Source: Parasitella parasitica NRRL 2501 (taxonomy: Eukaryota; Fungi; Mucoromycota). From it: a stretch of DNA of 64,000 bases. Made by a program: the position numbers and the translations under genes. The notes under the pieces are model-generated. The model was not told the DNA's origin. It made no database searches and was given only the letters and a program-made list of their open reading frames with translations. Position 1 is the first letter of the stretch, and each line of letters opens with the position of its first letter. The DNA is taken from contig MU619240.1 of the NCBI GenBank assembly GCA_025201805.1, forward strand, positions 419,750-483,749, read 5' to 3'. This document shows positions 9,783 through 62,496 of this stretch, piece by piece.

Positions 9783-10204
9783 CAAATATATATTAAATAG
9801 AAATGTATTGCATAGGAAACCTCTTCAACAATGCATTTAAGCTGCCTCTACTGCATTGACAAGCAAAGTGTGCTAAAATTTAAATCCAACAAAAAAAAAA
9901 GAATACTCTTACTTAGAATGAGCAATGTTCGGTAACATTATACGACTTTAGGTATTTTTACAACATGACACTTGTCTTTAAGACGTAGAATCATGGTTCA
10001 TCATGAGAGCGAGTGAACCAATTACCAAGAGCAAATTAAAATCACCAGCGTCTACACAATAAGCAAACAAATATATAGACCTTTTTTATTTATGAGAAAC
10101 AGAATAAAGAAAGGGTAATAAGAAAAGAAATAGAGAGAAAAACAAGGGAAAAGAACAAATAAAATGTACAAAAAAGAGTGCGATTTTCTTCTTGTATCTT
10201 AAGT

Positions 10205-11169
10205 TTATACGAGTAAAACAGCATTGATGCAACCATCGTTTTCTAAAGTCCAATTAGTTCAGAATAAAAACCCTGTGCACATCAAATGAAAAGCTTACCT
10301 GGATTATTAGTTACTTGAGCATATTTGCCCCAAACGACTTTACCACCTGTTGTAACCAAACCCAATTCGGAGACATTGACTTCGAGTACAGTACCCTTAG
10401 TAATGACACCAAGTTGAGTATAAAGAGGTGATTGAGGATTCTTTTTTACACCAATGATAGGTAAACAAAAGGTTGCTTTCAATTCTGGATGAGTGACATG
10501 TGCCTTCTTATAACGCAGACCCATAGGACGGACAAAACGTTCATACTTTGGTGGTTTACGAGTAAACCCTTCGCCCACAAAGGTAGCCTTTGTAACCAAA
10601 CGCTTCCATTGTTTTGTCTTATGCTTACCAGTCTTTACAACTTTGAACATCTCGTCTTCTGCCATACCACGAACAGTAGGCAGAGGAACCGACCATTTGC
10701 CAGCTTTTTCCTTACGCTTTTGTTTGACCATATTACTTAAAATCTTTGCACGATCTTCACCTTCACGATCCAGAAGATAAGTAGGCACAGCACCCTCAGG
10801 GATGGCATCGGCTGACTTTTGCTTGGCATTCTTTTCCTCATGTTGTTTGATGGTTTTCTTCATTTGAATCTTCTCCGCATGGCGCTTCTTATTCAACATC
10901 TTGGCTTTAAGGCCATGCACCTTCTGAGCATATTGTGAAGCCTTGTGAACCTGACGAGCCTCTCTCTTACGTCTAAAAATAATTTTTTACATCAATTTTC
11001 GAAATTTCAAAAATTGCGATCGAATTACTTACTTTCTCTCCTCATAATCGAGACGACGACCATGTCGTTTAATATGCTCTTCAATATGCTCGTTTTGAGG
11101 CTAATTAGAAGAAAATTAACAGTTATTATTGTATGTTTTTCACAAAATTTGCTTTTTATTTAGTACCAT
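10205..11169 (-). CDS. NSA2: Ribosome biogenesis protein Nsa2
   Basis: M|[20 protein letters not shown]...[15 protein letters not shown]...[12 protein letters not shown]; first coding exon is the ATG only; 3 introns. Confidence 0.97.
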
Positions 11170-11273
11170 ATTGCTATATGTGTAGATAAGGAAAGAGAGG
11201 AACTCTGATTTGTAAAAATTTGCATGGTATCGTAAAAAATTAGTTGAAACCGGTCACTGTACATCACCAATCA

Positions 11274-12884
11274 TTATAGAAACATATCCTCTGAGCTCTC
11301 GCTCAAGATCGCTCCTTCCAGTCTGATTTCGACGCCTGATGCTCTATTGTTTGTTCCTTCTTTAGGAAAAGTAGCTCCCTTCAGATAGGTGAATGTAAAG
11401 TCAACTTGATGATCAAAGTCAAAGCCGAATCTGGAATTTTGGAATATACAATTTTCTAAATAACTATCCTTGAAGCATGATTTGGGATCGATGTGATAGT
11501 CTGAGAAATCAAGATTAGAGAGGTTTTTCTCTTGCAGTTGAAATATAGTAGGCCTGTATACGACAATTTCGTTTGGGTTTCTTGGTGGAAGTGGATATAA
11601 CTGGTGTAACTCCTCTGAATAGATAATGTCAGTTTATTATTTAGGTGTATTTGATTAAGCGTTACCTTGTGTAATGACAGGCAAGTTGCTCCATCTTAAT
11701 TTAAGTAAATCTAAATGTGCAAATAATGAATATATCTTTATAGATACTTGAAAAATTACTGCAAATACCATTCAATCCGTAGAATCTTGCTTCTTGCATC
11801 AACTCATCCATACTGTATAAAGCACATTAGATGTTTATTCTGCTTAAAATATGGGGTATACCTTACATTTTAGGATCCTGTGTAACGCCCGCAGGTATCT
11901 AACGCAAAATTAACTACTGTCGTTTATATAAGTAATTGTCTGCATACCCTTAAATCACGTAAATAGTTGAGCACTAAGCGGAAGTAGGTACCATCTCTAT
12001 CGATGAAGTATGAATTATCTGCGTCTGGCTGAATAGCGCTGTCGCCTAGATAATCTAATCAGTAATGCGTTTATAATGTTGCAGTAAGGGTTTATTACTG
12101 GAAAACATGGATGCCAGCATAGAGTCGGGATCTTTTCGCAGTGTTGTCAAGGATGTTTCGAATAACTGGCCACCTACATTCAGTTTGATCTATTACTGTC
12201 TCGTGAGAAAGACATGTCAAATGATGTAGATATCTTGTAGTCTTACCTTTTCGTCTTGAAATCTCTTGATTTCTATCAGTTTATAGCGGTTAATAATGCT
12301 GATTTTCGAACTTGATAATTCTGCATGTACCTTTTATTATACTCTGCTCTTTCTGGAATTGTTGTTTTTCAACAATCATATGCTGCTGGTGATCCATTAT
12401 ATTCATGGATAGCTCATGGTAAGAGTTCTCGATTTTAGAGTGTAACTCAATATTGGCTTTGTCGAAATGTTCCTCTATTTCCTCAAGCGCTATCAGTTGA
12501 TCTTTCAGATGTTGGCTCAAAGCTAAAGAAGAGAATAGTCATCAGTGATTGTACAGGTACACATAACATGCATAGCGCACCTTCTTTTTCGAGCCTATAA
12601 CTTGCTACCAATTCATGCCAGGTGGCAGAAAAGCTCTTTGGACGCTGTTGTGAGGTTAGAGCGTATGTTCCGTCCGTTACTTCCTCATGCTCTTCTTTAT
12701 CTTCTTCTTTTTCATCTGGCTTGATCGTCTCTAAAGAACGGCTGTTCAACAGTTGCTTCATGTTATGCTTTTGCTGTTTTTCAACAGTTAGACATGTCAC
12801 TCCCATTTCATCCTCATTGGAAGACTGCGAAGTAGCAGCCAGATGTTCGAAAAAGGCAATAGGGTCCATATTGTTTTCGAACAT
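11274..12884 (-). CDS. BTB/POZ (KCTD/T1-type) protein with C-terminal pentapeptide-like repeats (KCTD9/FIP2-like)
   Basis: Spliced IKLNVGGQLFETSLTTLRKDPDSMLASMFS...YFIDRDGTYFRLVLNYLRD...EARFYGL; C-terminal NLSNLDFS...YLENCIFQNSRF...YLKGATF. Confidence 0.8.
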
Positions 12885-13013
12885 GGTTGATTTTGTAAAT
12901 ATATCAAAAAGAAAAAAAAAGCATACGAAAAAATCAAAACAAGTTCTTCATAAATATAGATAGAAGGCATGTGTTACCCTGTTTTAGTAATACAAAAGGT
13001 CATGCTTAATTGT

Positions 13014-16000
13014 TTATTTACATAATACATTTGAACATCTTGGACAAAGGTTACCATCTTGAGTGGAGTGATAATTCCAACAGCGGGGACATTTGCTGTG
13101 CTTCGATTTATAAAGAACAATTTTGCAGTTGTCGCCTATAAATTATGTAAGTAATTTTGCTTGCAAATAAAGCATCCAAAGTTACCTTCAATTACAGAAT
13201 CTCTTCCAGATTCACCCTGAATAAAATCTGACTTTTCATCTTCTATATTCACCTGACTGGTCATAAACAAAGACGATAGTTCTGAGGCTAAGTGACATAG
13301 CTATGAGTGGTGGTTATCATTGGAAGTAACTATTGATATACTCACAATCCATTGATCTTATTAGTTTGGCGAGTCTTGAATCACTGCTCAAGAATAATGA
13401 AATATCTGCCTCTTGTGAAGATCGAATATGTCTATCAGAAAATGAATGAGTTGGAGAAAGTGTAATTTATATCAGGCTACGCACTTTTCTTGACGAGCAG
13501 CTTCTAGTACTTGATTTACTTCTCCTTTGAGAAGTAAAAGTGTCGACCATTTAGTGTTCAGGCCAGTGTCATACCATTGTTCGTTCTAATGTTGCTTTTT
13601 GGATTAACACCTAATCAAGATAAAAATGCTATTATACGTACAGATTTAACCCACCCTATCTTGAAAACTGATGATTCTGGGCTGGGTGTGATATCCTTAT
13701 AGTTTTCATAGATTTCTTCTGCTGTATGACACACAAATGGCGCAAAGGATGTAGTGTATGACTTCAAGACTTCAAACAATACTGTTTGCGCCATTCTGCG
13801 AGATTCTGAGGTTTCAGACTCATTGTACAATCTGTCTTTAATTGTGTCAAAATAGAACGCTGACAGCGTGTTGTTGGTGAAGTGCTGGATATTTTGAACA
13901 ACTAGCTTGCTATTAATAACAAGATACTAAATATGTGCATAAGATCTCACCTCTGTTGAAAGCAAAATCATTATATGCACTTGTCACACGATCATTGTAA
14001 TTATATAATTGATAAAGCATGTATTTATCCACCTGCTTTGATTAATAACAAAGCCTTTAAATGTTTAGATCACCTACCTCTTGTAGTCTCTCATAGTCAA
14101 CATAGTGTTCTTCCTTGAAATCATGGAGATTACCAAGCAAAAATCTGGCAGTAGTGCGTATTTTACGCAAGCCGTCAGATATTTGCGCTATATTGCAATG
14201 AGAAATTTGAATTATAATAAATAGTCCTTATACTTACAGATAATAGAAGGCCCAATGCTTACATCTCGTGTATATTCGCAATTAGCCACCCAATAACGAA
14301 GCACATCACTACCGTAGGCAGGATTCTTCTTCTTATCTTTACCGCCCTCTGTGATGAGAATAGGCTCAAGCGTATTACCAATGCTTTTAGACATTTTTTG
14401 TCCTTTTTCATCTAATGCAAATCCATGGGTAACAAGAGTTCCGTAAGGTGCTTTCCCAGTGACAGCAATTGATGTCAACAGAGATGACTGAAACCATCCA
14501 CGATGTTGATCACTGCCTTCGAGATAAACGTCAGCTAAAGGCTTATTTGGGTCTCTACCTGGCATATTTTGAAGCATAGTCCACGAGGTACCACTATCAA
14601 ACCAAACATCCATAGTATCATATCCTCGTTTATACACCTTTCCATTATCTCTATATTTAGGGGCAACAAAGACGCTATCATCTTGTTCCTCCCACCAGGC
14701 ATCGGTGCCCTTTTCTTGAAGAACTTGAATGATATATTCAACAGAATTTTCAGTCAATAGAGCCTCTCCGTCTTGATCATACAAGGCGGGAATTGGAACA
14801 CCCCAAGACCTTTGGCGAGAGATACACCACTCTTTACGAGACAGGGTAAATTGCTCAAGACGACGAATAGCTATTAGATAGAATGATAATGTAAACTAAG
14901 ATAATTATCTTGTAAGGAAAAAAAAAAAGAAACTTACAGACTTCAGGAATCATGCGGATTTTCTTTAGGTTTTCTACAGCTTGTTGTTGCAGATGTTCAA
15001 CGTTGGCAAACCATTGAGCAGTAGCACTGGATTTTGCTAGAATGATGAGTGGTTCCCCGTCAGATAGCGTTTCATTAACTTACCGTAGCATTACAGGCTG
15101 CTTTGTACGCCAATCATATGGATATTTATGTATGTAATCTTGAGCAATGACTAAAGCTGATTCTCTTTCCAGAAGTTTAATAATGGCTGCATTTCCATCT
15201 GTAAAAGCCATCTTGCCTTCAAGATCAGAACCTGCTTCCTTTGTAAAACAACCACTATCGTCAACTATACGAAAAGTTGGCATCGTAAGCCATCAATCTC
15301 TTTATGAAACCTTACCTGGACTTAGCATTTCAATTTTATGTTGGAGGCAGACTTCATAATCCTCCATACCATGACCAGGAGCAGTGTGAACCAACCCTGT
15401 ACCTGATTCAGCCATAACGTGATCACCACCAATGATTGGCATGGTACCATGGTTCAAGGGATGACGGTATGTTGACCCTAATAGCTCTTGACCAGAAACT
15501 TGATCAAGGATATTAAAATGCTCCGCGTCGATCTCTTGCTTAAATGCTTCTACGCGGTCCGTACCTACGATATAGGTTCCTTTTTCATCTCCCTCAGGAA
15601 TCTCAACCAAAGAGTAATTCAATGCAGGATTTACAGAGATGGCTTTATTGGAAGGAATAGTCCAAGGCGTTGTTGTCCAGATTAATGCATATAAATTCTG
15701 GTTTTTAGTATATGATTCCCATTTTTTCTTCAGGGCGGGCCCCAATCCTTCCAAAGAAAAGCGAACGTGTATCGATTTAGACACATGGTCCTCTTTATAC
15801 TCTAGTTCTGATTCTGCTAATGCAGATTTCGATGAAGGAGACCAATACACAGGCTTCAGTTGTCTGTAAATATGCCCATGTTTTATCATATCTGTCAATA
15901 CTCGTAATTGACGGATCTCGTAATCATTTGTCAGTGTCAAATATGAATTATCCCAATCACCCATCACTCCCCAGCTCTTGAAGCTACGACGCTGTTTGTC

Positions 16001-16737
16001 TACTTCAAGAAGGGCTTTTTCTCGAGCTATTTTTCGAATATCGGTTGGTGATAAGGTTGCCTCCTTTCCTTTTCTCTAATTTTAAACGATCAATGCATTG
16101 ACCCGAATTTAACATTATCAAGGACCTACGCGGATTTGTTCCAAAGCCTTAAGCTCAATTGGAAGACCATGGCAATCCCATCCCGGTCGATAACTAACGT
16201 ATCCAGCGAAGCCATTAAAATAAATGCCATACTATAAATGATATCCAACTTACTAAACTTTATGTCCCTGAAGAATTTTGTAACGATTAACAATGTCCTT
16301 AAGGATTTTATTCATAGCATGGCCTAGTATGTTTTTTTGTTAGAATCTGAAATCAAGTAATTCCCAGAACACTATTATACCAGAGTGAACATTTCCATTT
16401 GCATAGGGTGGACCATCATGAAGAACAAAGAAGTCTTTGGGGTTGTTCTCCAACTAATAAACCAAATTAGCATAAAAAGAAGGGGCGTAAAGAAACAATT
16501 AATTACCTGCCAAGGATACAATTCCGTTGTACATCGATCTCTGAATAAATGCTCTCTTTTGGCAGCGTCTGCTCTCAGGGGAAATTTTGTCTTGGGCAAC
16601 AGGATTGTATTTGTATATGGATTGTCTGATGCTTTGGCTAGAACGCTGGTAGAATTCCAAAAGTTGCGACTTTTTACCTTGCTGAAACCGCTTGATGGGA
16701 AAAAGCGCATTGTGCGTAAGTGCAGAATTGTTGCCAT
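13014..16737 (-). CDS. ISM1: Mitochondrial isoleucyl-tRNA synthetase
   Basis: N-terminal transit-like peptide, [83 protein letters not shown]-terminal CPRCW zinc finger; many introns. Confidence 0.95.
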
Positions 16738-16819
16738 GACGGAAAAAATGAAACTGAATTGAAATGACAGGGACTCGAGGTTTTGAAAGTACTAGTTATG
16801 CCTTAGCCAGCAGCAGCAG

Positions 16820-17607
16820 CAGCCAACCGAATTCAAATACCGATCTGTCTTTTTCTTGTGTTTTGAAAACAAGACATGGTTTTTGAAAAGCTTTTCGCGC
16901 TTTTTTGCAAATATGTCTACAGTTTGTTAACAAAGTATGTAAAGCTTAATAAGAGACTTTTGTAGAGTAATTGATTATGCATCTGATGATACAACTTTCA
17001 AGCAAATTTGTCACTAAATTCCTAGAATAATTTTTACTTGAATAAAAAACTGTTTTTGACCAAAAGTCTTCATTTTCGATAATGAAATGTTCAGAATAAA
17101 CAAGTTCATATGAATTTTGAACCATTTGCGATCATCTATTGTTAGTATGTATCATAGTAAAAAATCTCAATCCTGTGGCTAAATCCGGAAAATAGTAAAT
17201 CCGGAACTTTTGCCCTTGTGGACCTTCATGAAAAATGGTTGAAAATTAGGCAATTTACGATTGACCATTTTTTCTTTGCAATTGCATCAGGTAGTAACTA
17301 ATAGTCTTAGGAATTGATTTGATGCTATTTTGAGGATCTTTAGTCGACCAAAAGGTTGTGATTTATGCCATCAAAGCTCCAAAGAATAAGCTCAATTTTT
17401 GAGATTAAAGAGTTCTTTTAAATGTATTTTAGTTATCCAAAGTACTCGAATTAATTTATTATATGCTTCATGAAGTCTAGTTCATGATGGGATTTTCAGT
17501 ATCGCAATAAAACAAGTTTTAGATGTAGACAAATTCAATTTTCATTAAGAATTTGGGTTGGTAGCTTTGAAGTTTTGAATATCAATCGAGCTGTGGAAGT
17601 GTTGAAG
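16820..17607 (+). repeat. Left arm of 788-bp inverted repeat
   Basis: Reverse complement of 20938-21725; only mismatch found is 16849 vs 21696. Confidence 0.97.
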
Positions 17608-18086
17608 CGATGGTGAAGACTTCTAAACCAAGTACTTTAGTATGATATATTATTCACTTTTCTTTATGTACACTGTACAAAAGAAAGCCAAACGTATTGT
17701 TGATTTTATCGATGAAATATCACTACCGCTCTGCATTGGCGAAGCTGAAGGCTTGACCAAATTCATGAAACCACCTTGATTTAAGTGGATATAATGAGCC
17801 ATATGTATTTTGAACATTTCGAATGCCATATTTTTTGACATAGAATGCTGAAAACGATATCAATTTTACAGCTTTATTAAGTTTGTTTCTGTTAAACAAA
17901 AAAGAGTTGGGGTAAAGATAAAAAAGATGAATCATATAGTATTATAATTAAGATTAAAAAGTGTATCAATTAGAGCAGAAACAACCAGTGTTCGTATTAG
18001 TTGTGGGTAGGTGGGTGGGTTAATGTAATGGGAATAATGCAAACATATTTAAAAAAATTGTTTAGCTCGTCTTCAGAGCTAGTGCC

Positions 18087-19713
18087 TTATTTTCCATGGA
18101 TAGAGTAAACAAAGAACAATACCCATGCAGTGATAAGAGCAGAGACAAAGAAACCAACAATAGGGTAGCTGAACTTCTTGGTAGGCGTCTCAGAGTAAGG
18201 ATCCTTGCCTTTTGATGTTAATTGGAGCTCCTTGTCATTGATTTCTTGCATGCGGATAACACGCTTTGAGCGTCTCATTTCCAAAAGATTACCGTAAAAA
18301 TAAAATTGATTCCACCAAAGAGCACAAATCAAAACGAATCCAAAACCAGCCAAAATAATGAATACCAACATGACATTGACATAAGATTGACCAGCAGTTT
18401 TATCTTGCACAACGCCAACAGCGACATCAAGAATGGCAGTACCAATATTATTGGAGCTCTTATAGATACCTAAACCAGTACCAATGTACTCTGATGGTAA
18501 GAGCATCCCGATCGAAGTAATCATAGAAATAGGACCGAAGGCAAGAGAAATAGAGTAAAACACCATACCAACAACAGCATCAACGTAAGTCCAGCCCAAT
18601 AAGCCCGAACTGAGAATCAAGAAGATGGAAGAGATGAGCAAGATGACTACACGTAGACCATAGAAATCCATGATAAAGCCTAAAACTGGCGTAGCAACGA
18701 TGGGAACAGCTTGAGATGCACTAGCTTTATAACCAGCTAAGCGATCTTCGGTACCAAAATGCTTGGATATCAAATCTGTGGCAATGGTTTGGAAAGACGA
18801 CCAGACAGCAGCATAGATGAATTCAATCAGGATAATGTGCCAAAATATAAGGGGGAACTTGAAGATGGATCTCCACTTGAAGGTTTTTTTCTTTTTCAAC
18901 GCTTCCTTTTCCTTTTCGGTCATGACAACTTGGCCCTTGAGGTGTCTGACCACCAGAGCGTAGATCAGATTCATGGCAATAGAGAAACAGCAAAGAATAA
19001 AAGATAACCAGAAAGCCCAGACCCAATCACCAGTGGCAACAGATATAGAGTTAGCTACCAATGTGCCTAAAAAGGTAGATAAACGACTAATTGACAGTTG
19101 AAGACCAATGGCAATAGATAAATGTCTTGTACGGAACCACTTTGAAAGCAAGGATTCTTGCATAGTCACAATTAAACCACTACCGATACCGAATACAACG
19201 CGAGCAACTACCATAAGAGCATATGATTCGTATTTAGCAGCAATGGCAGTTAAAAGAGACCCGAGAATGATCATGAAATTAATAGCAAGAGTACCCCAGA
19301 CGGAACCAAATATATCGATAAAGATACCGCCAGCGATAGGAAAGATTGTATTGATGATAGACACCGAAGCAGATATGACACCGTATTGAGTATTTGAAAT
19401 AGCAAGATTAGTGGTAATCTGCTTCTTCATGGCAGAAAGAGCACTGGCAGAGAAATGAGAGCCAACTACAAACTATATGAGTAATTTGTTTTTTTGACAT
19501 GTACATGTTTAACATACATGGAAACAGTAAGGCAGTGACCAAGGCAATGATCTTATATTTCCAAGGAGCATTGGCAAGTGCAGTGTCACCACCATGCGTA
19601 ATGACTTCTTCGCTTTTATCATCTTCTTTAAAGCTTCTATCATCTTGGATATATTTTTCAGAGGCTAAAGCATTAGACACGACCTGTTCCTTTTCGCTTG
19701 GCTTATGATCCAT
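18087..19713 (-). CDS. Major facilitator superfamily transporter, MFSD1-like
   Basis: About 12 hydrophobic segments, motif A-like GGIFIDIFGS, ARVVFGIGSG...QESLLSKWF; ATG 19713, one intron at about 19467-19518, intact frame. Confidence 0.9.
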
Positions 19714-19811
19714 TTTAAAAAAAAATGAGGAAAAAGAATAATTCAAAAAGAAAGAAAATATGTGTTATTTATACATAAAAGCTCAGAAATCTTGGTTTGG
19801 CAGCAAGAATA

Positions 19812-20275
19812 ATCTGATCCTATAATGCATGTTCTTGATGTGGAAGGGTAACGCCAAAAATATTATCTGATTCCAAATTGCGTTCAGATGTACGACCTTA
19901 TATTCCTTTTCTCCGTTATTTATAGTTGTATTCCAGCTTCTTGATCAAGAGGATGAAAAAAAAAACATCAAGATAAACAAGAGTTTGATGCTTGAGTATC
20001 CACAGCGAATCTACATTCTTACTATATTGCAAGTTTTAAAGCCATTGTATTTAAATCAGATAAGCAGAACTGCAAAATAGATATCAGATTGTAAACAATC
20101 ATTTTATTTGTTCTTATTCTAAATCGTACTCAACTTTGTAGTAAACCCAGGTATATCAGATTGTACCCCGTCTATTTTGAGTTGAAACTATAACCATCTT
20201 GTACGGTAGTACAACGAAACAGACAAAAATTTCTCGCTGATTGAGTAAGGAAATTACTAAACATCAATCTGATAA
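19812..20275. promoter_or_regulatory. Cluster of GATA-factor (SreA/Urbs1/Fep1-type) ATCWGAT(AA) sites upstream of the MFS gene
   Basis: Exact ATCWGATAA at 19863-19871 (minus), 20055-20063 and 20267-20275; ATCWGAT also at 19812, 20083 and 20155, the last two within a 13-bp direct repeat ATATCAGATTGTA. Confidence 0.65.
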
Positions 20276-20937
20276 ATAATTCCTAATTGGATACACGATG
20301 AATATGAATATGATAATTCCGGTAATATTTTGACGTTTAGGAAAATAACATAGGCTAGAAAAAATACATTAATTATAAGTATATGGTAGGATGATTTTGA
20401 TTAATGTAAATAAAGATCTTCCTAGCCATTGCAATTGAAATAAGTTTGTCTTATATATTTTACTTCGTGTTTGTGCAGGTTTAAATTTTACTTTTTTGTA
20501 TTATTTTACAATTATTATAACTAATAGATGGAATCCTCAGAAGCTATCTGTGTCATGTAACCATTCATATTCAAAGAACGAATTTGATTCTTGTGTTCTA
20601 AACATAAGAAGTTAAAATGTAAGCGGAAACAATATACAAATCAACACTCAATGAGACTACAATGTATAAGCGATTGCAATATATGCATTGTAAAGCGGTA
20701 TCAAGCTTAAATCAGTATTTTTTGGCTCTCAAAAATGCAGTAGTGTCTTTGAGATGAATTGATGAGGTGCGGGTAGTACTTGAGCATGGAGAATGGTATA
20801 CACAAATGTTAGCTTTGAAAAACGGAATATAAACGAACATTTACAAGTTAAAGGTAATGCATTCTAGGGAAACAATTATCACTATAAAGATAAATAACTT
20901 ATAGTGTTTGTAAGCATGTAAGAAAATACCATCATCA

Positions 20938-21725
20938 CTTCAACACTTCCACAGCTCGATTGATATTCAAAACTTCAAAGCTACCAACCCAAATTCTTAA
21001 TGAAAATTGAATTTGTCTACATCTAAAACTTGTTTTATTGCGATACTGAAAATCCCATCATGAACTAGACTTCATGAAGCATATAATAAATTAATTCGAG
21101 TACTTTGGATAACTAAAATACATTTAAAAGAACTCTTTAATCTCAAAAATTGAGCTTATTCTTTGGAGCTTTGATGGCATAAATCACAACCTTTTGGTCG
21201 ACTAAAGATCCTCAAAATAGCATCAAATCAATTCCTAAGACTATTAGTTACTACCTGATGCAATTGCAAAGAAAAAATGGTCAATCGTAAATTGCCTAAT
21301 TTTCAACCATTTTTCATGAAGGTCCACAAGGGCAAAAGTTCCGGATTTACTATTTTCCGGATTTAGCCACAGGATTGAGATTTTTTACTATGATACATAC
21401 TAACAATAGATGATCGCAAATGGTTCAAAATTCATATGAACTTGTTTATTCTGAACATTTCATTATCGAAAATGAAGACTTTTGGTCAAAAACAGTTTTT
21501 TATTCAAGTAAAAATTATTCTAGGAATTTAGTGACAAATTTGCTTGAAAGTTGTATCATCAGATGCATAATCAATTACTCTACAAAAGTCTCTTATTAAG
21601 CTTTACATACTTTGTTAACAAACTGTAGACATATTTGCAAAAAAGCGCGAAAAGCTTTTCAAAAACCATGTCTTGTTTTCAAAACACAAGAAAAAAACAG
21701 ATCGGTATTTGAATTCGGTTGGCTG
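20938..21725 (-). repeat. Right arm of 788-bp inverted repeat
   Basis: Reverse complement of 16820-17607. Confidence 0.97.
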
Positions 21726-22352
21726 GTTGTGGTAGTAATTTGAGGACGTATAAAATAGACTGTGTTTTTCTAAATAAAAGAACCAACTTTATTGTTTGTT
21801 AATTAAAATAGCTTAATACTAAGATTGCAATAATTCATACCAAATAGTTGTTGGTGAAGTTGTTAAAATATAATATAAAATTGAGAGAAGAATGTGTGTA
21901 GAGTGGGGAGGTGTTTTTAAATGTATTTATATAGTAAATCATGATCTCGATTATGAGCTTCGTATTTTTAGAGGATTTGCGCTTCCTCAAAACAGTAGTA
22001 GTCTGGGCAACTTTGTCAATATGTTTAGAACTTAATCCCTAATAAAATCGTTTAAATAAAATGAATATATTCCTTAAGGCAATATTATAACTAAATTCTT
22101 CCTTACAAGTCATTTTTTTAAATATAAATAAACATAATTCTGGTGATAATTGCATGCAAACAAGTCAGACATACAGAATAAGAATCACTTTAATGTACGT
22201 TTTGATAGGTTACAAATGACAAACCCAAATTAAATTGACGAGATAAAGACTGCCAAACACAGGTTGGTGTCGAAATCGCGTCCCCCTTCAGTCCTTGAAA
22301 AAAAAAAAAAAAAAAAACCCTTTTGACTTCCACATTTTTTAAAGAAAAGGGA

Positions 22353-25300
22353 ATGACAATTAGAAAGATTAGGAGCGATTCTGAAAGCGATGATGAGAAG
22401 GATGTTCCATCTGCCAAACACATCAAACTTTCCAACGACGATGTTCATATGAATGAAGAAGAGGAACAACGGGTCGAGGCATCTTCTTCCGAGCCTGTTC
22501 CAGAAATGCGCAATTTGGAGCTGAAGCCTTTGGCAGTTGATACTGATGGGTAATGATCTTTTTTAGGGTCCAAAAAATTATTTGTCTAATATCTAATTTT
22601 GTACAGATTTGTTGAGGGTTCCATAGTTAAAATCACCTTAACAAATTTTGTTACATATAATTACTGTGAGATATCCCCAGGACCTCATATGAATATGATT
22701 ATCGGTCCTAACGGTACCGGTAAATCAACCATTGTCTGTGCCATTGCTTTAGGATTAGGTGGTACTCCTGCTTTACTAGGAAGAGCTAAGGATATTAACG
22801 AGTTTGTCAAGACTGGTGAAGATGAAGCAACCATTATAATTGAGCTTAAGAAGGTGGGGACTCGCAATGTCATCGTTCAACGTTCTTTCAGAAAGTCCAA
22901 CAAAACCAATAGCTGGAGAATCAATGGTCTGTATAGAGATAAATCGGCTTCGAAAATACATCTTGTCTCATAAAAAACTTTAGGTAAAAATTGTCCTTAT
23001 AAAGACGTTCAGAGTGTTATAAATGGCTTCAACATTCAGGTTGATAACTTATGGTAAAATGACACAAGGATTTATGATGACATGTAATATTAATATACAA
23101 TTTTATTCTAGTCAATTTTTACCTCAAGATCGAGTAGCTGAATTTGCAGAAGTAAAGTGTTACAAATACAACTTGAAATACAAACTTTCTTATAAGCTTC
23201 GTTAGTTGACCCCTCCTTTGCTATTGCAAAGAACACAAGCTGCAGCTGGTAAAGCTGAATTACATGAAATGCAGCAAAAATTAGTCCAAATCCGTGAAAA
23301 CGAAAAGAGCTTAATGAAAACTCATGAATCAGATCTTTTACACTTGCAAACTTTGAAAAACAAAAATCAGGAACTGGAAAGAGATGTTTTCAGAATGCAA
23401 CAAAGAGAGAAAATTATCAACAATATCAAGCTTTTAAAGGCCCAAATTCCGCTTGTTAATTACACAGAATCAAAGGCTAGATATGATCGCGCTGAAATTG
23501 ATTATCAAAGTGAAAAAGACAAGTACCAAAAAGCTAAAGATGAAGTTGCTCCTATCAAAGCTTTAATTGAGTAAGGTCCCTCAATAACCAATTCGTTAAT
23601 ATGAAGCATTAATTTTTTACCCTAATAAGCCGAGTTGCAGGTGAAAATCAAAGAGCGAAAAGAAATTTGGATCAAGCAGAAACGAGTTACAAAGCAACTA
23701 TAGCAGATGTCAGAAAAGCTATTGAGAAAATCAAGACAATGGTAAACAAAGCAAAGATTGTAGATGTACAGCATACTTAATTGATTTGTAGAGAGTCGAA
23801 ATAAATACCCATAAACGCACAATTAACGACAAGAAAAGGAAATTACCTGAGAGAGAAGCAGAAATCGAAAAAGCTGTAAGAAGGATCCAGCAAATCGAAG
23901 AACAAGTGGCTACTCCACCTAGTTCTGACACTTCTCAGTTCGAAAGTGCCATTGTAAGTTTTCTTATTGAGTAATGGCTGAGTACTAAGCACTAATCGTT
24001 TTCAATGTATAGAATGAAATCAACCAAGAAATAAACAACTTGCAGGCAGAGAAAGTTGAAATTAAGGACAAGTGTGATGAAGAGGACAGAAAAAAATATC
24101 AAATAAATGAACGTTTGAAATCAGGACATGCACAGTAAGTCAAGGTCCCATTATACTATAATTAGTAGTTAAAAGCATTTCTTTTTCATAGAATGAAGCA
24201 GCTTGAAAATGTCAAAGAGCAACGTATGAGACTCTTGACGGGCCAGTACCCAGATGTTGCTCGAGCATACGAATGGTTAAAGGAGAATAGACATAGATTT
24301 TCAGGCCAAGTCTATGACCCTGTTGTTCTTCTACTCAATCTGAAGGATTCACGATATGCGGCACAGGTAGAACAGGCTTTGGGTGGCTTCAGAAGTTCAC
24401 ATCTTAGAGTAAGTATCTTTATTTCAAACATCAAAAATCAATCGTCTAATTACCATATTAGCAATTTATATGTGAAAAAAGAGAAGATTATCAATTGATG
24501 ACAAGAATTTGCATTGACCAGCACAAAATGAAAATCAATGTCTCATGGCCTGATCTTGACCCTGCTGTAGACTACAGAAGAAAGCCTGCGCCTACAGAAG
24601 AAATTAAAGCAAAACTTGGCATGGAGTATTATGTTGTTGATCTCCTTGATGGACCCAAATACGTCATTGATACATTGTGTCAAGATGCTAATATCAATTT
24701 GATCCCAGTTACTATCAATCCCATCAATGAACAGGCCGTCGTTTCTGCTAATCTATTCCAAAAATTTGTTGCTGGTGACACATTCTACAATACAAAAACA
24801 AGTATTTATGGCAGAAGATCTAAACAAACACAAACCAGCATTATCCAACCTGCTAGGTTTCTTGATAATACGATTGATACCGATGCCCAAGCCAACTTGA
24901 AGGAAGAAATGCGATCTCTTCAAGCGAGCATTCAACAAGCTGACATTATTCTTAAGGAGTTGGGCCGTGAACACGATAAGATTAAAGCGAAATTAGAAGA
25001 AAAAAAACACCTAAAAGAAGACCAGCAATCACAAAAGAGAGATGTACAAAAAAGATTTCAACAATATCAGCAAATACTGCGAAAATTGACTCAATATAAA
25101 GCAGAGCTGGTTGATATAAGAAAGCGACCCGAAGAACAGAAAGCAGAAATTGCTCGAATGGAAAAAGACGTTTGGCGAATGGCCGACGAAGAAGACATTC
25201 TATTGATGACTTATACAAAACTTTTAGAGAAGGCTATAGACGAGTTTGAACAACGCAATAAGGCTGCCATGCTTTACCATTTTATGGGGGTCAAGAGCAA

Positions 25301-26315
25301 AACTATTGAATCGTTTGCAAATACTCAAACCGAAAACTTGAACAATGCTCGCACTGCTATGAACAACGCTAAAAACCAATATTTGACCGCTAAAAAAGAA
25401 ACCAAAGAATACATGGAAACGTCTAAAACTGCTGGAAATGATCTGCCTGATGAGTTGAGAGAAGAATTCAATGAAGTTGTTCTCAAATGGAAGCAAGAAG
25501 AAGGCTTGAAGGTAACACTTACTGAATTGAACAACAAAATTGCCGAGGATGAGGGAAAAGTTTCTGCTATTCGCTACGCTAATGCTGATGCCATGAGTCA
25601 TTACCAAGAACGAAAGCAAGCTGTAAGAGTTGGTTGGTATCTATTTTCTGTTTGATATTAAACAATTCTGTAGATCGAAACATTAGAAGCCAAGGCTAAT
25701 CAAACTGGAGACATTTTAAATAAGTATCGTATTCAAATTCAAAAAATCAAGAGCCAATGGGCACCATTGATTAAGGAATTAGTTTCAAGAATTGACGAGA
25801 AGTTTTCTGCAGCATTCCAACGCATCAACTGTGCTGGAGCAATTCAACTCGAGGAATCAGAGGATTTCGACAAGTGGGGTATCAACATTCTCGTTAAATT
25901 CAGAGATTCAGAGAAACTCCAGCTCTTGACTGGACAAAGACAATCTGGCGGCGAAAGATCCGTATCGACTATTCTTTACTTGATGTCACTTCAGGATTTG
26001 GCTGCTTCTCCTTTCCGTGTTGTAGACGAGATCAATCAGGGTATGGATCCTCGTAATGAGCGTATGATTCATGAACAGATCGTGCAAAGTGCAACTCGTG
26101 CTGGCACCTCACAGTAAGTGTGCACATTAAAAAATAGAGCACATTTGACTGATACTCCCATTAGATACTTCTTGATCACTCCAAAGTTGTTGCCTGATCT
26201 CTACTACAATCAAAGAATGCGTGTACTTTGTATTTATAATATTGAGTGGTTGCCTGAAAAGATCCAGCCATTACAATCCTATTTAGATCATGCTAAAGCT
26301 ACTGGAATTGTGTAA
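22353..26315 (+). CDS. SMC5: Structural maintenance of chromosomes protein 5
   Basis: NFVTY, Walker A GPNGTGKST, QFLPQDRVAEFA, coiled coils and hinge, signature QSGGERSVST, Walker B FRVVDEINQGMD, YFLITPKLL; multiple introns. Confidence 0.96.
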
Positions 26316-27540
26316 CTCGAATTGTATACCCCATCTCTAAATTTGAGCAATATAATAAATATTCAAGAGACTCAAAATTACTGAATTAAAGTAATGACAA
26401 ATAATGTATCCAGCTCTGTTAAATTACTGCTTGCTAGAATATTTATGTTCGTATGTGAATATAAATGCATACACACAAGACCATTGCGATGCTCAGCAAG
26501 AGTACGAAATTTGAAGAATTTCACCAGTATTTGGGTCATCTAATCTTTTTAAAATCAAAGAACAAGAAAATAACGTTTACAATCTGAACTGAATATACAA
26601 AGTCTCATTGGTGTAGATATCGTGGTTGCAATACCTTGAAAAAGTTAAAATGTATTGTTGCTTACTTTAGCAAGCATCTTGGATTATCATATGAATAAAA
26701 AACAAAAAACTTTTTGTATCTGCATCTCAACTTCTCTAATTTCTGCCGATGTATCCATTAAATTCGGACATGTGTAAAACTACGTTCATCACAAAATATA
26801 TTTTACATGCAATACAACTATTGTTTGACGATTTTTAGAAATTAATTTCACTTGTACTGGCCGACAGCCCTGACTTAGCAGTTGGCTTTGCAGGCAATCC
26901 TGACTGCATCATATCAATGTCCCGGCACCAGACAGATGGCAGCATGAACATACTAGCTTAAGGTGAGGAAAAGAGAAAGTCAACGTAGGGAAACTATTAT
27001 TTAGTCAATTGGAATCTTAAACGGCTTGAAAAACACGATTGATGAAAAAAAATTATCAATTTGATGTATGAACCATGGCAAGTTAATGTCCATGATATTT
27101 CTGGGTACTTGCCACTGCCCCTTATCCTGGTTCACAGTTGCCAAGTTTTTCCTTTCAGATAAGCACTAAAATTCAATAGTTTATTCACTTTATGTGAGCG
27201 CTACAAAATTAAACAACTTGTGAGCCATACAAATGTATAGTTATGAAATGGCCAGTAGCGTTTGTCTGTATAATACGCCAATAATCAATCTAACATCATG
27301 TACACTAATTCATTCGAATAAAAAATTACGTTACTACTCCTGATTCCTTTTGTCGAATCTATGTTGGCTCGTACATAAATGAAAAATTGTTATTAGTGTA
27401 CAGCGTTTTTAATCAAGAATAATAAAGAAAAGGGAGTGTATGTGAGTAAACGAGTTAGGGATAGAGTGGAAGAAAAAAATTATAGTTTAAAAATTGGAGT
27501 TAAGATGTACATGTATATAATTTTTTTTTTTTTTGTCTAT

Positions 27541-60185: not shown

Positions 60186-60602
60186 AATGCCACTTAATTA
60201 TGACCATCACCTTTTCCCCCGCTTAATGGCCAAATTTGCAATCTCTGATATCTTTACAAATTATTAAGCGATAGAGACACAACCTTCAGCAAAAATCTTC
60301 TTTTTTTGCAGCATTTTACAACATGCCCGAGTCCCATGTATCTCTGACCATTTTTCAGATTTTGCTATGTTTGGACCCCAAACCTCATATTCCATTTTCA
60401 GTTTTCAACTTTGGGTCAACCTTCAGGGTCATTTTTAGGTACGGATTTGGGGTCTAAACTAAGAATGCATCCAAGTACTAGTATAATAACTGTACCTCAC
60501 TACGTCTTCCGATTCTAGATATTTATTTTTGCTGTCGAGATATTGCCAAAACCAGATTTTGCAGATTTCACAAATTTTACAGCATATGATCCTATAACAA
60601 GT
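60186..60602 (+). repeat. Dispersed direct repeat B, copy 1 (uninterrupted)
   Basis: Collinear with 61672-62496 minus the LTR (ccccgcttaa, aatttgcaatctct, cccaaacctcatatt, cagttttcaactttgggtc, tttttaggtacggatttgggg). Confidence 0.85.
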
Positions 60603-61671: not shown

Positions 61672-62496
61672 AATACCACCAAATCTGAAATATTACCTTT
61701 TTTCCCCGCTTAAAGGCTTAATTTGCAATCTCTAATAACTTTTAAAACTATTAAGCAATAGTGTTGAGATCTGCAAGATCGAAATAAGAAAAGTATAATA
61801 TAAAACGTTGAATTAACGAGATACGAAAACTTGAGATTACTTTATTAAAGATTCAACTTTGCATCTGCTATTTATACTTTTTACAACAACATAAATTTTT
61901 GGTGACTTATTTAAAATACTAGTCGATAGTAATCGATAAGAATAATTTGCAAGCAACATCATATCCTTAACAGGGTACGATATATTATTATACTACAAGG
62001 TTATTGATCTTTGATCTGACAGTACCTTATTGTTTGTCAATCATACAGATCTGTGTTACAGATAACCTTCCTGATTTGAAACAAAGACTTTATTCTCCTG
62101 TTTCGACCAGTATAACAACACATCATTGGACAGTCTCCAATCTTTAATTGAAGTACACTATCATGATCTCCTAACCTACATTATGGCAGATCAAATAGAG
62201 ATGTAACCTTTAGCCAAAATATTTTACCTTTACACTATTCTACAACATCTCCGAGTCTCATGTACAGTATGTCCCAAACCTCATATTCGATTTTTTCAGT
62301 TTTCAACTTTGGGTCTTTCTTCAGGGTTATTTTTAGGTACGGATTTGGGGTTCAAGTTCAGACCATATCATAATATCAGTACACTAACTTTATCTCACTA
62401 TGTCTTTGGATTCACGATATCTATCTTTGCTATCCAGATACTGTCAAAACAAGATTTTGCTTATTTAATAAAAAGCATATTGGCCTATTGCAAGTT
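61672..62496 (+). repeat. Dispersed direct repeat B, copy 2 (interrupted by solo LTR)
   Basis: Matches 60186-60602 on both sides of the 61762-62193 insertion. Confidence 0.85.
61762..62193 (-). mobile_element. Solo LTR (432 bp) with 5-bp TSD AATAG
   Basis: TG...CA termini, subterminal inverted GATCTGC/GCAGATC, AATAG at 61757-61761 and 62194-62198; minus-strand TATAAATA (about 61869-61876) and AATAAA (about 61841-61846); repeat B copy 1 shows the empty site. Confidence 0.8.

What the first reader, a model, noticed from the sequence alone, without database searches (positions are those of the whole stretch)
16820..21725. 4.9-kb cassette: one intact MFS transporter enclosed by a 788-bp near-perfect inverted repeat (candidate invertible switch or gene-carrying element)
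Seen: 16820-17607 is the reverse complement of 20938-21725 with one mismatch found. The arms have no convincing ORF, no TIRs of their own and no TG..CA LTR ends. The 3.3-kb interior holds only an intact MFSD1-like gene with its promoter. The outer flanks (..CAGCAGCAG| and |GTTGTGGTAG) show no target-site duplication, and there is no transposase inside. Other dispersed repeats in the window are visibly diverged, so these arms are either very young or actively homogenised. Known precedents: Pack-MULE/foldback elements capture host genes between long TIRs, and IR-flanked segments flip in yeast flip/flop MAT switching (Ogataea, Komagataella). Inference: a mobile cargo element, a composite of two inverted copies of one repeat, or a recombinational flip-flop segment carrying a transporter. 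I do not know of such a system described in Mucorales.
Basis: partly seen in the sequence, partly recalled or inferred. Interest (0 to 1): 0.92.

Follow-up and report, generated by a model that had tools for sequence, protein, structure and literature searches.

The report
Inverted duplicate DNA flanking transporter gene
A pin-mould transporter gene sits between two mirror-image copies of an otherwise unique 0.8-kb stretch of non-coding DNA; this is real, but it looks like a scar of chromosome breakage and repair at a rearrangement-prone spot, not a jumping gene or a purpose-built genetic switch.

Summary
16820-17607 is the reverse complement of 20938-21725 with one mismatch (16849/21696), and the match runs to 17615/20930 with two more. 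Contigs of three public DNA runs break exactly at the arm ends, and the arm has 2.1 times the depth of its surroundings. It is therefore not an assembly artefact. The arm occurs only twice in the 32.8-Mb genome and has no ORF, no target-site duplication and no terminal repeats of its own. It consists of unique DNA around an old ~340-bp low-copy repeat.

The enclosed MFSD1-like gene is the resident ortholog. It is spliced and strongly expressed. It lies between ISM1 and SMC5, in the same orientation and without any inverted repeat, in the other assembly labelled Parasitella parasitica. It is inverted relative to two Mucor species, and SMC5 has a different orientation in Thamnidium and Gilbertella. 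Both flanks of the gene are thus reused breakpoints.

Best reading: an inverted segmental duplication left by break repair. It is a passive substrate for homologous recombination, which would flip the interior and homogenise the arms. A mobile cargo element is rejected. A programmed switch has no support, but orientation could not be tested because only contigs, not long reads, were available. The scan found a similar repeat-flanked gene (XPB) elsewhere in this genome, where the arms were read as transposon relics.

The parts
16820..17615 (.). Left arm of the inverted repeat. The 16820-17607 core has one mismatch; the last 8 nt have two.
   Evidence: 2x depth
20930..21725 (.). Right arm, the reverse complement of the left arm.
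16849..16849 (.). The only mismatch in the core (C here; the mirror position 21696 carries the other allele). It lies 30 nt from the outer end. Each allele stays with its own flank contig in all three DNA runs.
17053..17388 (.). Old low-copy dispersed repeat (~340 bp) in the centre of the arm (mirror copy about 21157-21492). It is 67-72% identical to copies on contigs C13 and C20. The 233 bp and 227 bp on either side occur nowhere else in the genome.
17616..20929 (.). Single-copy 3314-bp interior, unique in the genome.
17909..19713 (-). MFSD1-like MFS transporter gene. CDS is 19713-19518 plus 19465-18087. The RNA contig covers 17909-19465 and 19518-19694. The product equals P0123 (524 aa) over the 447 aa tested.
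19466..19517 (-). 52-nt intron of the MFS gene (GT..AG on the minus strand).
   Evidence: table 5
20523..20601 (.). 79-bp conserved non-coding block about 0.8 kb upstream of the MFS ATG, 85% identical in two Mucor species. It travels with the gene, so the old inversion breakpoint lies outside it.
16808..16823 (.). (CAG)5.3 run that straddles the outer end of the left arm.
21727..21994 (.). ~268-bp dispersed repeat, at least 14 copies in the genome, up to 95% identical. It starts 0-10 bp outside the right arm.
   Evidence: multi-copy depth
12101..16737 (-). ISM1 (mitochondrial isoleucyl-tRNA synthetase). Its ATG lies 83 bp from the left arm. Two introns are confirmed by an RNA contig.
22353..26385 (+). 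SMC5. Its ATG lies 628 bp from the right arm.

Best explanation
This is a real inverted segmental duplication. One 796-bp piece of otherwise unique, non-coding intergenic DNA is present twice, in opposite orientation, on either side of the resident MFSD1-like transporter gene. It arose in this lineage as a by-product of DNA-break repair at a locus whose two intergenic spacers have broken repeatedly during the evolution of Mucoraceae. Two routes fit. One is a staggered-break inversion that duplicates the DNA between the nicks, later flipped back by recombination between the new arms. The other is a one-step template-switch copy of 0.8 kb into a nearby break. It is not mobile and there is no sign that it is a dedicated switch. 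How it behaves now is inferred: the arms are substrates for ordinary homologous recombination. Crossovers would invert the 3.3-kb interior and non-crossover conversion would keep the arms identical. Because the gene carries its own promoter and 3' end, a flip would only change which neighbour it reads towards.

Shown: the repeat, its two-copy state, its absence in relatives, the synteny of the gene, and the reuse of both breakpoints. Inferred: the repair mechanism, the youth of the repeat, and recombination between the arms.
For: The IR is real and present twice per genome. The arm is found only at these two places in 32.8 Mb, and its outer 233 bp and inner 227 bp have no other match. There is no TSD, no ORF and no terminal repeat. 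The boundaries are sharp, with no decayed extension on either side.

The MFS gene is the ortholog: 98% aa identity to the CBS 412.66 assembly and 94% to Mucor. In L007 it lies between ISM1 and SMC5 in the same orientation with no IR. Two Mucor species have ISM1 and MFS divergent, that is MFS inverted relative to this window, with no IR. Thamnidium and Gilbertella have SMC5 and MFS in tandem. That makes three configurations in four genera, with every difference falling in the two spacers where the arms now lie.

Inverted duplications of ancestrally unique sequence, 46 bp to 1.9 kb, at inversion breakpoints, together with breakpoint reuse, are a described outcome of staggered breaks (PMC1885836). 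The outer ends coincide with a (CAG)5 run and with the end of a young dispersed repeat. The inner junction shows 6 of 8 imperfect homology, as expected of microhomology-mediated joining.
Against: The nearest relative has the same gene orientation without the IR, so a single staggered-break inversion does not fit. A second flip or a template-switch insertion has to be assumed. Which arm is the parent copy could not be determined, because the intergenic DNA is unalignable with L007. All three mismatches lie within 30 nt of the arm ends. That pattern would also fit an older repeat whose core is kept identical by conversion. The three DNA runs show no difference from the assembly over 6 kb, so they are probably one strain. 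Nothing is known about other isolates or about orientation.
Confidence: 0.65

Rival explanations
1. An old inverted repeat, created with the Mucor-versus-Parasitella inversion, kept identical by continual gene conversion and re-inverting from time to time. This would be a passive flip/flop region like the 24-kb one on S. cerevisiae chromosome XIV.
For: All three mismatches lie at arm positions 30, 789 and 794 of 796. If mutations fell evenly, the chance that all three lie within 30 nt of an end is about 4e-4 (my calculation). Conversion rarely reaches repeat ends. The segment is inverted relative to Mucor, and the arms sit inside both breakpoint intervals. The yeast precedent has a homogenised IR, recurrent re-inversion and an orientation that is stable on laboratory timescales (PMC9731477). 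An earlier scan note reports homogenised repeat arms around XPB in this genome (not tested here).
Against: No IR, not even a decayed one, is found in L007, which shares the gene order and orientation. No zone of intermediate identity lies beyond the arm ends. The two inner mismatches may be junction microhomology rather than mutations. The only other nearby repeat pair in the window is 79% identical, so it is not homogenised.
Confidence: 0.2
2. A programmed or regulated invertible switch in which orientation controls expression of the transporter or its neighbours, as in Ogataea flip/flop mating-type switching.
For: The architecture fits: long identical IRs around a single highly expressed gene.
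Against: The promoter, the CDS and the 3' end (mRNA contig 17909-19694) all lie inside the interior, so a flip does not uncouple the gene from its promoter. A 3.3-kb flip barely changes the distance to any silencing region. The IR is not conserved in any relative. There is no recombinase gene in or beside the cassette.
Confidence: 0.04
3. A gene-carrying transposon (Pack-MULE or Foldback-like), or two independent insertions of one low-copy element on either side of the gene.
For: Long terminal inverted arms. The centre of the arm belongs to an old dispersed repeat family. Another repeat abuts the right arm.
Against: There is no TSD around the cassette or around either arm. There are only two arm copies, and the unique arm flanks around the old repeat show that a segment was copied, not an element. 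The cargo is the syntenic ortholog. There is no transposase.
Confidence: 0.03
4. An assembly artefact, such as a chimeric or mis-joined repeat.
For: Near-perfect IRs can arise from mis-assembly. The runs may be the assembly's own source data.
Against: The contig graph was built independently of the assembly, and three runs give the same result. The arm has 2.08-2.11x depth, the interior contig ends in the same arm end on both sides, and each flank has its own allele of the mismatch.
Confidence: 0.02

Closest known systems
Inversion-associated inverted duplications from staggered breaks (Drosophila melanogaster group; Ranz et al. 2007, PMC1885836)
   Same: There are inverted copies of ancestrally unique, non-repetitive DNA at the two ends of a segment. 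The size lies within the reported range (46 bp to 1.9 kb). The duplication comes from one breakpoint only. The locus shows breakpoint reuse across lineages.
   Different: The segment here is a single gene of 3.3 kb, not a chromosomal inversion. The copies are 99.6-99.9% identical, against about 88% in flies. The nearest relative has the same orientation, so the simple one-step model does not fit.
Saccharomyces chromosome XIV flip/flop region (Salzberg et al. 2022, PMC9731477)
   Same: It is a non-programmed invertible region bounded by almost identical IRs that are homogenised by recombination. This is what the cassette would work like if it recombines.
   Different: The yeast IRs are 4 kb, contain genes, and are conserved for at least 17 million years across the genus. 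Both orientations are documented there. Here the arms are non-coding, lineage-specific, and only one orientation is known.
Flip/flop mating-type switching in Ogataea polymorpha (PMC5720833)
   Same: IR-bounded segment that is inverted by recombination between the arms.
   Different: In Ogataea, orientation decides which MAT locus falls under centromeric repression, and switching is induced by starvation. Here no element is separated from its promoter and no position effect is apparent.
Pack-MULE and Foldback transposons
   Same: Long inverted termini around host-gene sequence.
   Different: There is no TSD, no family of termini in the genome, and the gene is the resident ortholog at its ancestral place, not a captured copy.

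Membership tests
Pack-MULE / Foldback gene-carrying transposon | Target-site duplication flanking the element | tested here: not met
   The flanks GCAGCAGCAG| and |GTTGTGGTAG share nothing. Neither arm has a TSD of its own.
Pack-MULE / Foldback gene-carrying transposon | Terminal repeats belong to a multi-copy family in the genome | tested here: not met
   The arm is found only at its own two places. The outer 233 bp and inner 227 bp are unique.
Pack-MULE / Foldback gene-carrying transposon | The cargo is a captured copy or fragment, not the gene at its ancestral locus | tested here: not met
   The gene is next to SMC5 in Thamnidium and Gilbertella. It lies between SMC5 and ISM1 in L007 and next to ISM1 in two Mucor species.
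Inversion with staggered-break inverted duplication | Inverted duplicates of ancestrally unique sequence at both ends of the segment | tested here: met
Inversion with staggered-break inverted duplication | The segment is inverted relative to the state before the duplication | tested here: inconclusive
   It is inverted relative to two Mucor species but not relative to the nearest relative L007, which lacks the IR.
IR-mediated flip/flop region (passive or programmed) | Both orientations exist in cells or populations | not testable with these tools
   Only short-read contigs were available. All four junctions are the same in either orientation. The interior ORF was not on record in other contigs.
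IR-mediated flip/flop region (passive or programmed) | The IR is conserved and homogenised in related species | tested here: not met
   No IR of 40 nt or more in L005, L006 or L007. No residual inverted similarity in L007.
Programmed switch (Ogataea type) | Orientation changes expression through a promoter or silencer outside the invertible segment | tested here: not met
   The mRNA contig and 1.2 kb of upstream DNA, including a conserved block, all lie inside the interior. The effect on expression itself was not measured.

The most novel reading that the evidence does not exclude
The arms recombine often enough for the transporter cassette to exist in both orientations within a mycelium or population. 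Orientation would then matter. It could matter through read-through of the very strongly expressed MFS gene into the arm that holds the ISM1 upstream region. It could also matter through hairpin RNA made from transcripts that span both arms and feed the active RNAi machinery of Mucorales. That would be the first natural invertible gene cassette described in an early-diverging fungus.
Probability: 0.06. Interest if true: 0.7.

Novelty: new member of a known kind. Interest (0 to 1): 0.3.

Why it matters
It is a clean, well-delimited example in Mucorales of an inverted duplication of unique DNA sitting exactly in two spacers that have broken repeatedly in related genera. It is therefore a useful case for studying how small inversions and breakpoint reuse arise in these fungi. 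It also marks a place where assemblies and short-read mapping cannot fix gene orientation. It does not reveal a new kind of mobile element or a new regulatory system.

Tried and rejected
(1) Parent copy. I aligned both intergenic spacers with those of L007 and ran a shuffle-controlled local alignment. Only an SMC5-proximal block at 22248-22288 is significant. The weak 52-bp hit did not hold, so the parental arm stays unknown.

(2) A supposed low-depth variant of the arm, suggested by loose ends at 17046 and 17351 in runs X3 and X5. The loose sequences map to contig C20. The low depth is a bin average of short chance matches, so this lead was dropped.

(3) RNA genes in the arms. There are no tRNAs. 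The only Rfam hit is a sub-threshold snoR9 hit at 20291-20376, which lies in the interior.

(4) Closer relatives. All Logan and NCBI members of the 90% protein cluster are Mucor species or the two Parasitella-labelled assemblies. The interior ORF and P0123 are not on record for context look-up.

(5) Other long IRs nearby. None was found in 264 kb.

(6) Orientation from reads. Only Logan contigs were served, and they cannot span a 0.8-kb repeat.

Searches used exon 2 of the MFS gene by reference (447-aa ORF).
Full report
OBSERVATION. The repeat is there as described. The repeat finder gives a single inverted pair, 16820-17615 and 20930-21725, 796 nt, separated by 3314 nt. A base-by-base comparison gives one mismatch in 16820-17607 (16849, mirrored at 21696) and two more at 17608 and 17613. 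Beyond both ends the similarity drops at once to the random level. A sensitive search for a decayed extension on either side found nothing. It is the only inverted repeat of 80 nt or more in the window. It is also the only one of 100 nt or more in the window plus twenty 10-kb samples of the same contig. The window has just one direct-repeat pair, 180 nt at 79% identity. Chance is not an issue.

NOT AN ARTEFACT. Logan contigs of three public DNA runs were laid on 16300-22250. All three show the graph that a true inverted repeat must give.
- A 758-nt arm contig (16850-17607, equal to 20938-21695) has 2.11, 2.09 and 2.08 times the depth of the flanks and interior.
- A 3390-nt interior contig (17578-20967) carries the same 30 nt of the arm's inner end, reverse-complemented, at both tips.
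- A left-flank contig runs to 16879 and a right-flank contig covers 21666-21793. Each carries its own allele of the single mismatch.

A direct repeat or a single arm would not give this graph. The runs show no difference from the assembly over the 6 kb apart from a multi-copy repeat, so they are probably one strain sequenced several times. They are independent of the assembler but are not independent isolates. The four junctions are identical in either orientation of the interior, so contigs say nothing about flipping. No raw or long reads were served.

ANATOMY. The left flank is the 5' end of ISM1 on the minus strand. Its ATG is near 16737, 83 bp from the arm, and two of its introns are seen in an RNA contig. 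The right flank is the 5' end of SMC5 on the plus strand, with its ATG at about 22353, 628 bp from the arm.

The interior holds one gene, an MFSD1-like major-facilitator transporter on the minus strand. Pfam MFS_1 matches at E = 1.6e-33. Its CDS is 19713-19518 plus 19465-18087. The 52-nt intron and the mRNA body (17909-19694) are seen in a contig of a run guessed to be RNA, at about eight times the depth of ISM1. The promoter, a 79-bp conserved upstream block (20523-20601) and the 3' end therefore all lie inside the interior. Neither arm is part of the mRNA.

The arms have no ORF above 59 aa, no tRNA and no Rfam match. The arm is not a repeat family. In the whole 32.8-Mb assembly it matches only itself and its partner. 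The one exception is its centre (17053-17388), an old ~340-bp low-copy repeat that is 67-72% identical to copies on two other contigs. The 233 bp outside and the 227 bp inside that centre are unique to the two arms. A segment of the chromosome was therefore copied, old repeat and unique flanks together. This was not two insertions of one element.

The outer end of the left arm lies inside a (CAG)5 run. The outer end of the right arm lies 0-10 bp from the end of a ~268-bp dispersed repeat with at least 14 copies, the closest 95% identical. The exact distance depends on how the repeat's first 20 nt are aligned.

WHOSE GENOME, AND THE RELATIVES. The 447-aa second exon, searched by reference without joining exons, is 100% identical to P0123. 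This protein is labelled Parasitella parasitica and lies on a contig of 483,749 bp, which is the length of the window's contig. I fetched the orthologous locus from five other genomes.
- In the other assembly labelled P. parasitica (GCA_000938895.1, CBS 412.66 by PMC9540331), the order and orientation are the same as here: SMC5, MFS, ISM1. Coding DNA is about 83% identical, and there is no inverted repeat and no residual inverted similarity.
- In Mucor fragilis and M. lusitanicus, ISM1 and MFS are divergent. The MFS segment (window 17871-20601) is inverted relative to this window, the right-hand neighbour differs, and there is no IR.
- In Thamnidium elegans and Gilbertella persicaria, SMC5 and MFS are neighbours in tandem orientation.

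Drawn with MFS pointing right, the states are: SMC5> MFS> (Thamnidium, Gilbertella); <ISM1 MFS> (Mucor); <SMC5 MFS> ISM1> (both Parasitella-labelled genomes). The gene is thus an old resident of this neighbourhood. All differences fall in the two spacers beside it, which is where the arms now lie. The 79-bp upstream block is shared with Mucor but not found in L007. This adds to the picture of repeated remodelling.

WHAT IT IS. A mobile cargo element is excluded on three tested criteria: no TSD, no family of termini, and cargo at its ancestral locus. What remains is an inverted segmental duplication of unique DNA flanking a resident gene at reused breakpoints. That is the signature described for inversions made by staggered breaks. 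There, the DNA between two nicks is filled in and ends up, inverted, at both ends of the inverted segment. Reported sizes are 46 bp to 1.9 kb, often from one breakpoint only, and breakpoints are reused (PMC1885836).

The fit is not perfect, because the nearest relative has the same orientation without the repeat. Two explanations are possible. The event may have happened in this lineage and the interior later flipped back by recombination between the new arms. Alternatively, 0.8 kb was copied in inverted orientation into a nearby break by template switching. The 6 of 8 imperfect homology at the inner junction, the CAG at the left outer junction and the transposon end at the right outer junction are compatible with the second route, but they do not prove it. 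I could not tell which arm is the parent, because the spacers are unalignable with L007.

HOW OLD, AND WHAT IT DOES NOW. With 1 mismatch in 788 nt (3 in 796), the duplication is either very recent or kept identical by gene conversion.
- For youth: it is absent from every relative, and its edges are sharp.
- For conversion: all three mismatches lie within 30 nt of an arm end, about 4e-4 by chance if all three are real mutations. There the arms were transposon relics, unlike here.

I put roughly 65% on a lineage-specific repair scar without any dedicated function and 20% on an older, homogenised, occasionally re-inverting region. The second would resemble the yeast chromosome XIV flip/flop, whose orientation is stable on laboratory timescales (PMC9731477). 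In either case it follows from general knowledge of homologous recombination, and was not shown here, that 0.8-kb identical inverted arms 3.3 kb apart will sometimes cross over and flip the interior.

A programmed switch is unlikely. No promoter or silencer is separated from the gene by a flip, no recombinase is nearby, and the structure is not conserved. In Ogataea, by contrast, orientation places a MAT locus under centromeric repression (PMC5720833). The candidate centromere-like island noted by another reader about 26 kb away (unchecked) is too far for a 3.3-kb flip to matter.

VERDICT. It is a new member of a known kind, of moderate-to-low interest. Long reads or orientation-specific PCR would settle the only open question that could raise it.

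Noticed in passing
window 21727-21994: ~268-bp dispersed repeat with at least 14 copies in the genome (74-95% identity). It has short inverted termini (TTTGAGG...CCTCAAA) and a possible 3-4-bp duplication (GTAG) at this copy. It may be a young non-autonomous element. An RNA contig of a related copy touches it.
   Followed up: partly
window 17053-17388 (and mirror); L003:1496-1835; L004:1320-1659: Old ~340-bp low-copy repeat family, 67-72% identical between copies, with several well-conserved short blocks. Its nature is unknown.
   Followed up: partly
window 10053-26385 versus L007: The two assemblies labelled Parasitella parasitica are only about 83% identical in coding DNA here, and their spacers are unalignable. 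They are unlikely to be the same species, or one of them is mislabelled. Collinearity with L007 also ends just past SMC5.
   Followed up: partly
window 20523-20601: 79-bp single-copy non-coding block about 0.8 kb upstream of the MFS ATG, 85% identical in two Mucor species, which is more than the coding DNA. It is absent from L007, Thamnidium, Gilbertella and Cokeromyces loci, and no RNA was seen over it. It may be a cis-regulatory module.
   Followed up: partly
window 22248-22288: The only significantly conserved block between this genome and L007 upstream of SMC5. It contains GACGCGA, which resembles the MluI cell-cycle box as far as I recall.
   Followed up: no
window 60395-60574 and 62293-62472: The only direct-repeat pair in the window: 180 nt, 79% identical, 1.9 kb apart.
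   Followed up: no
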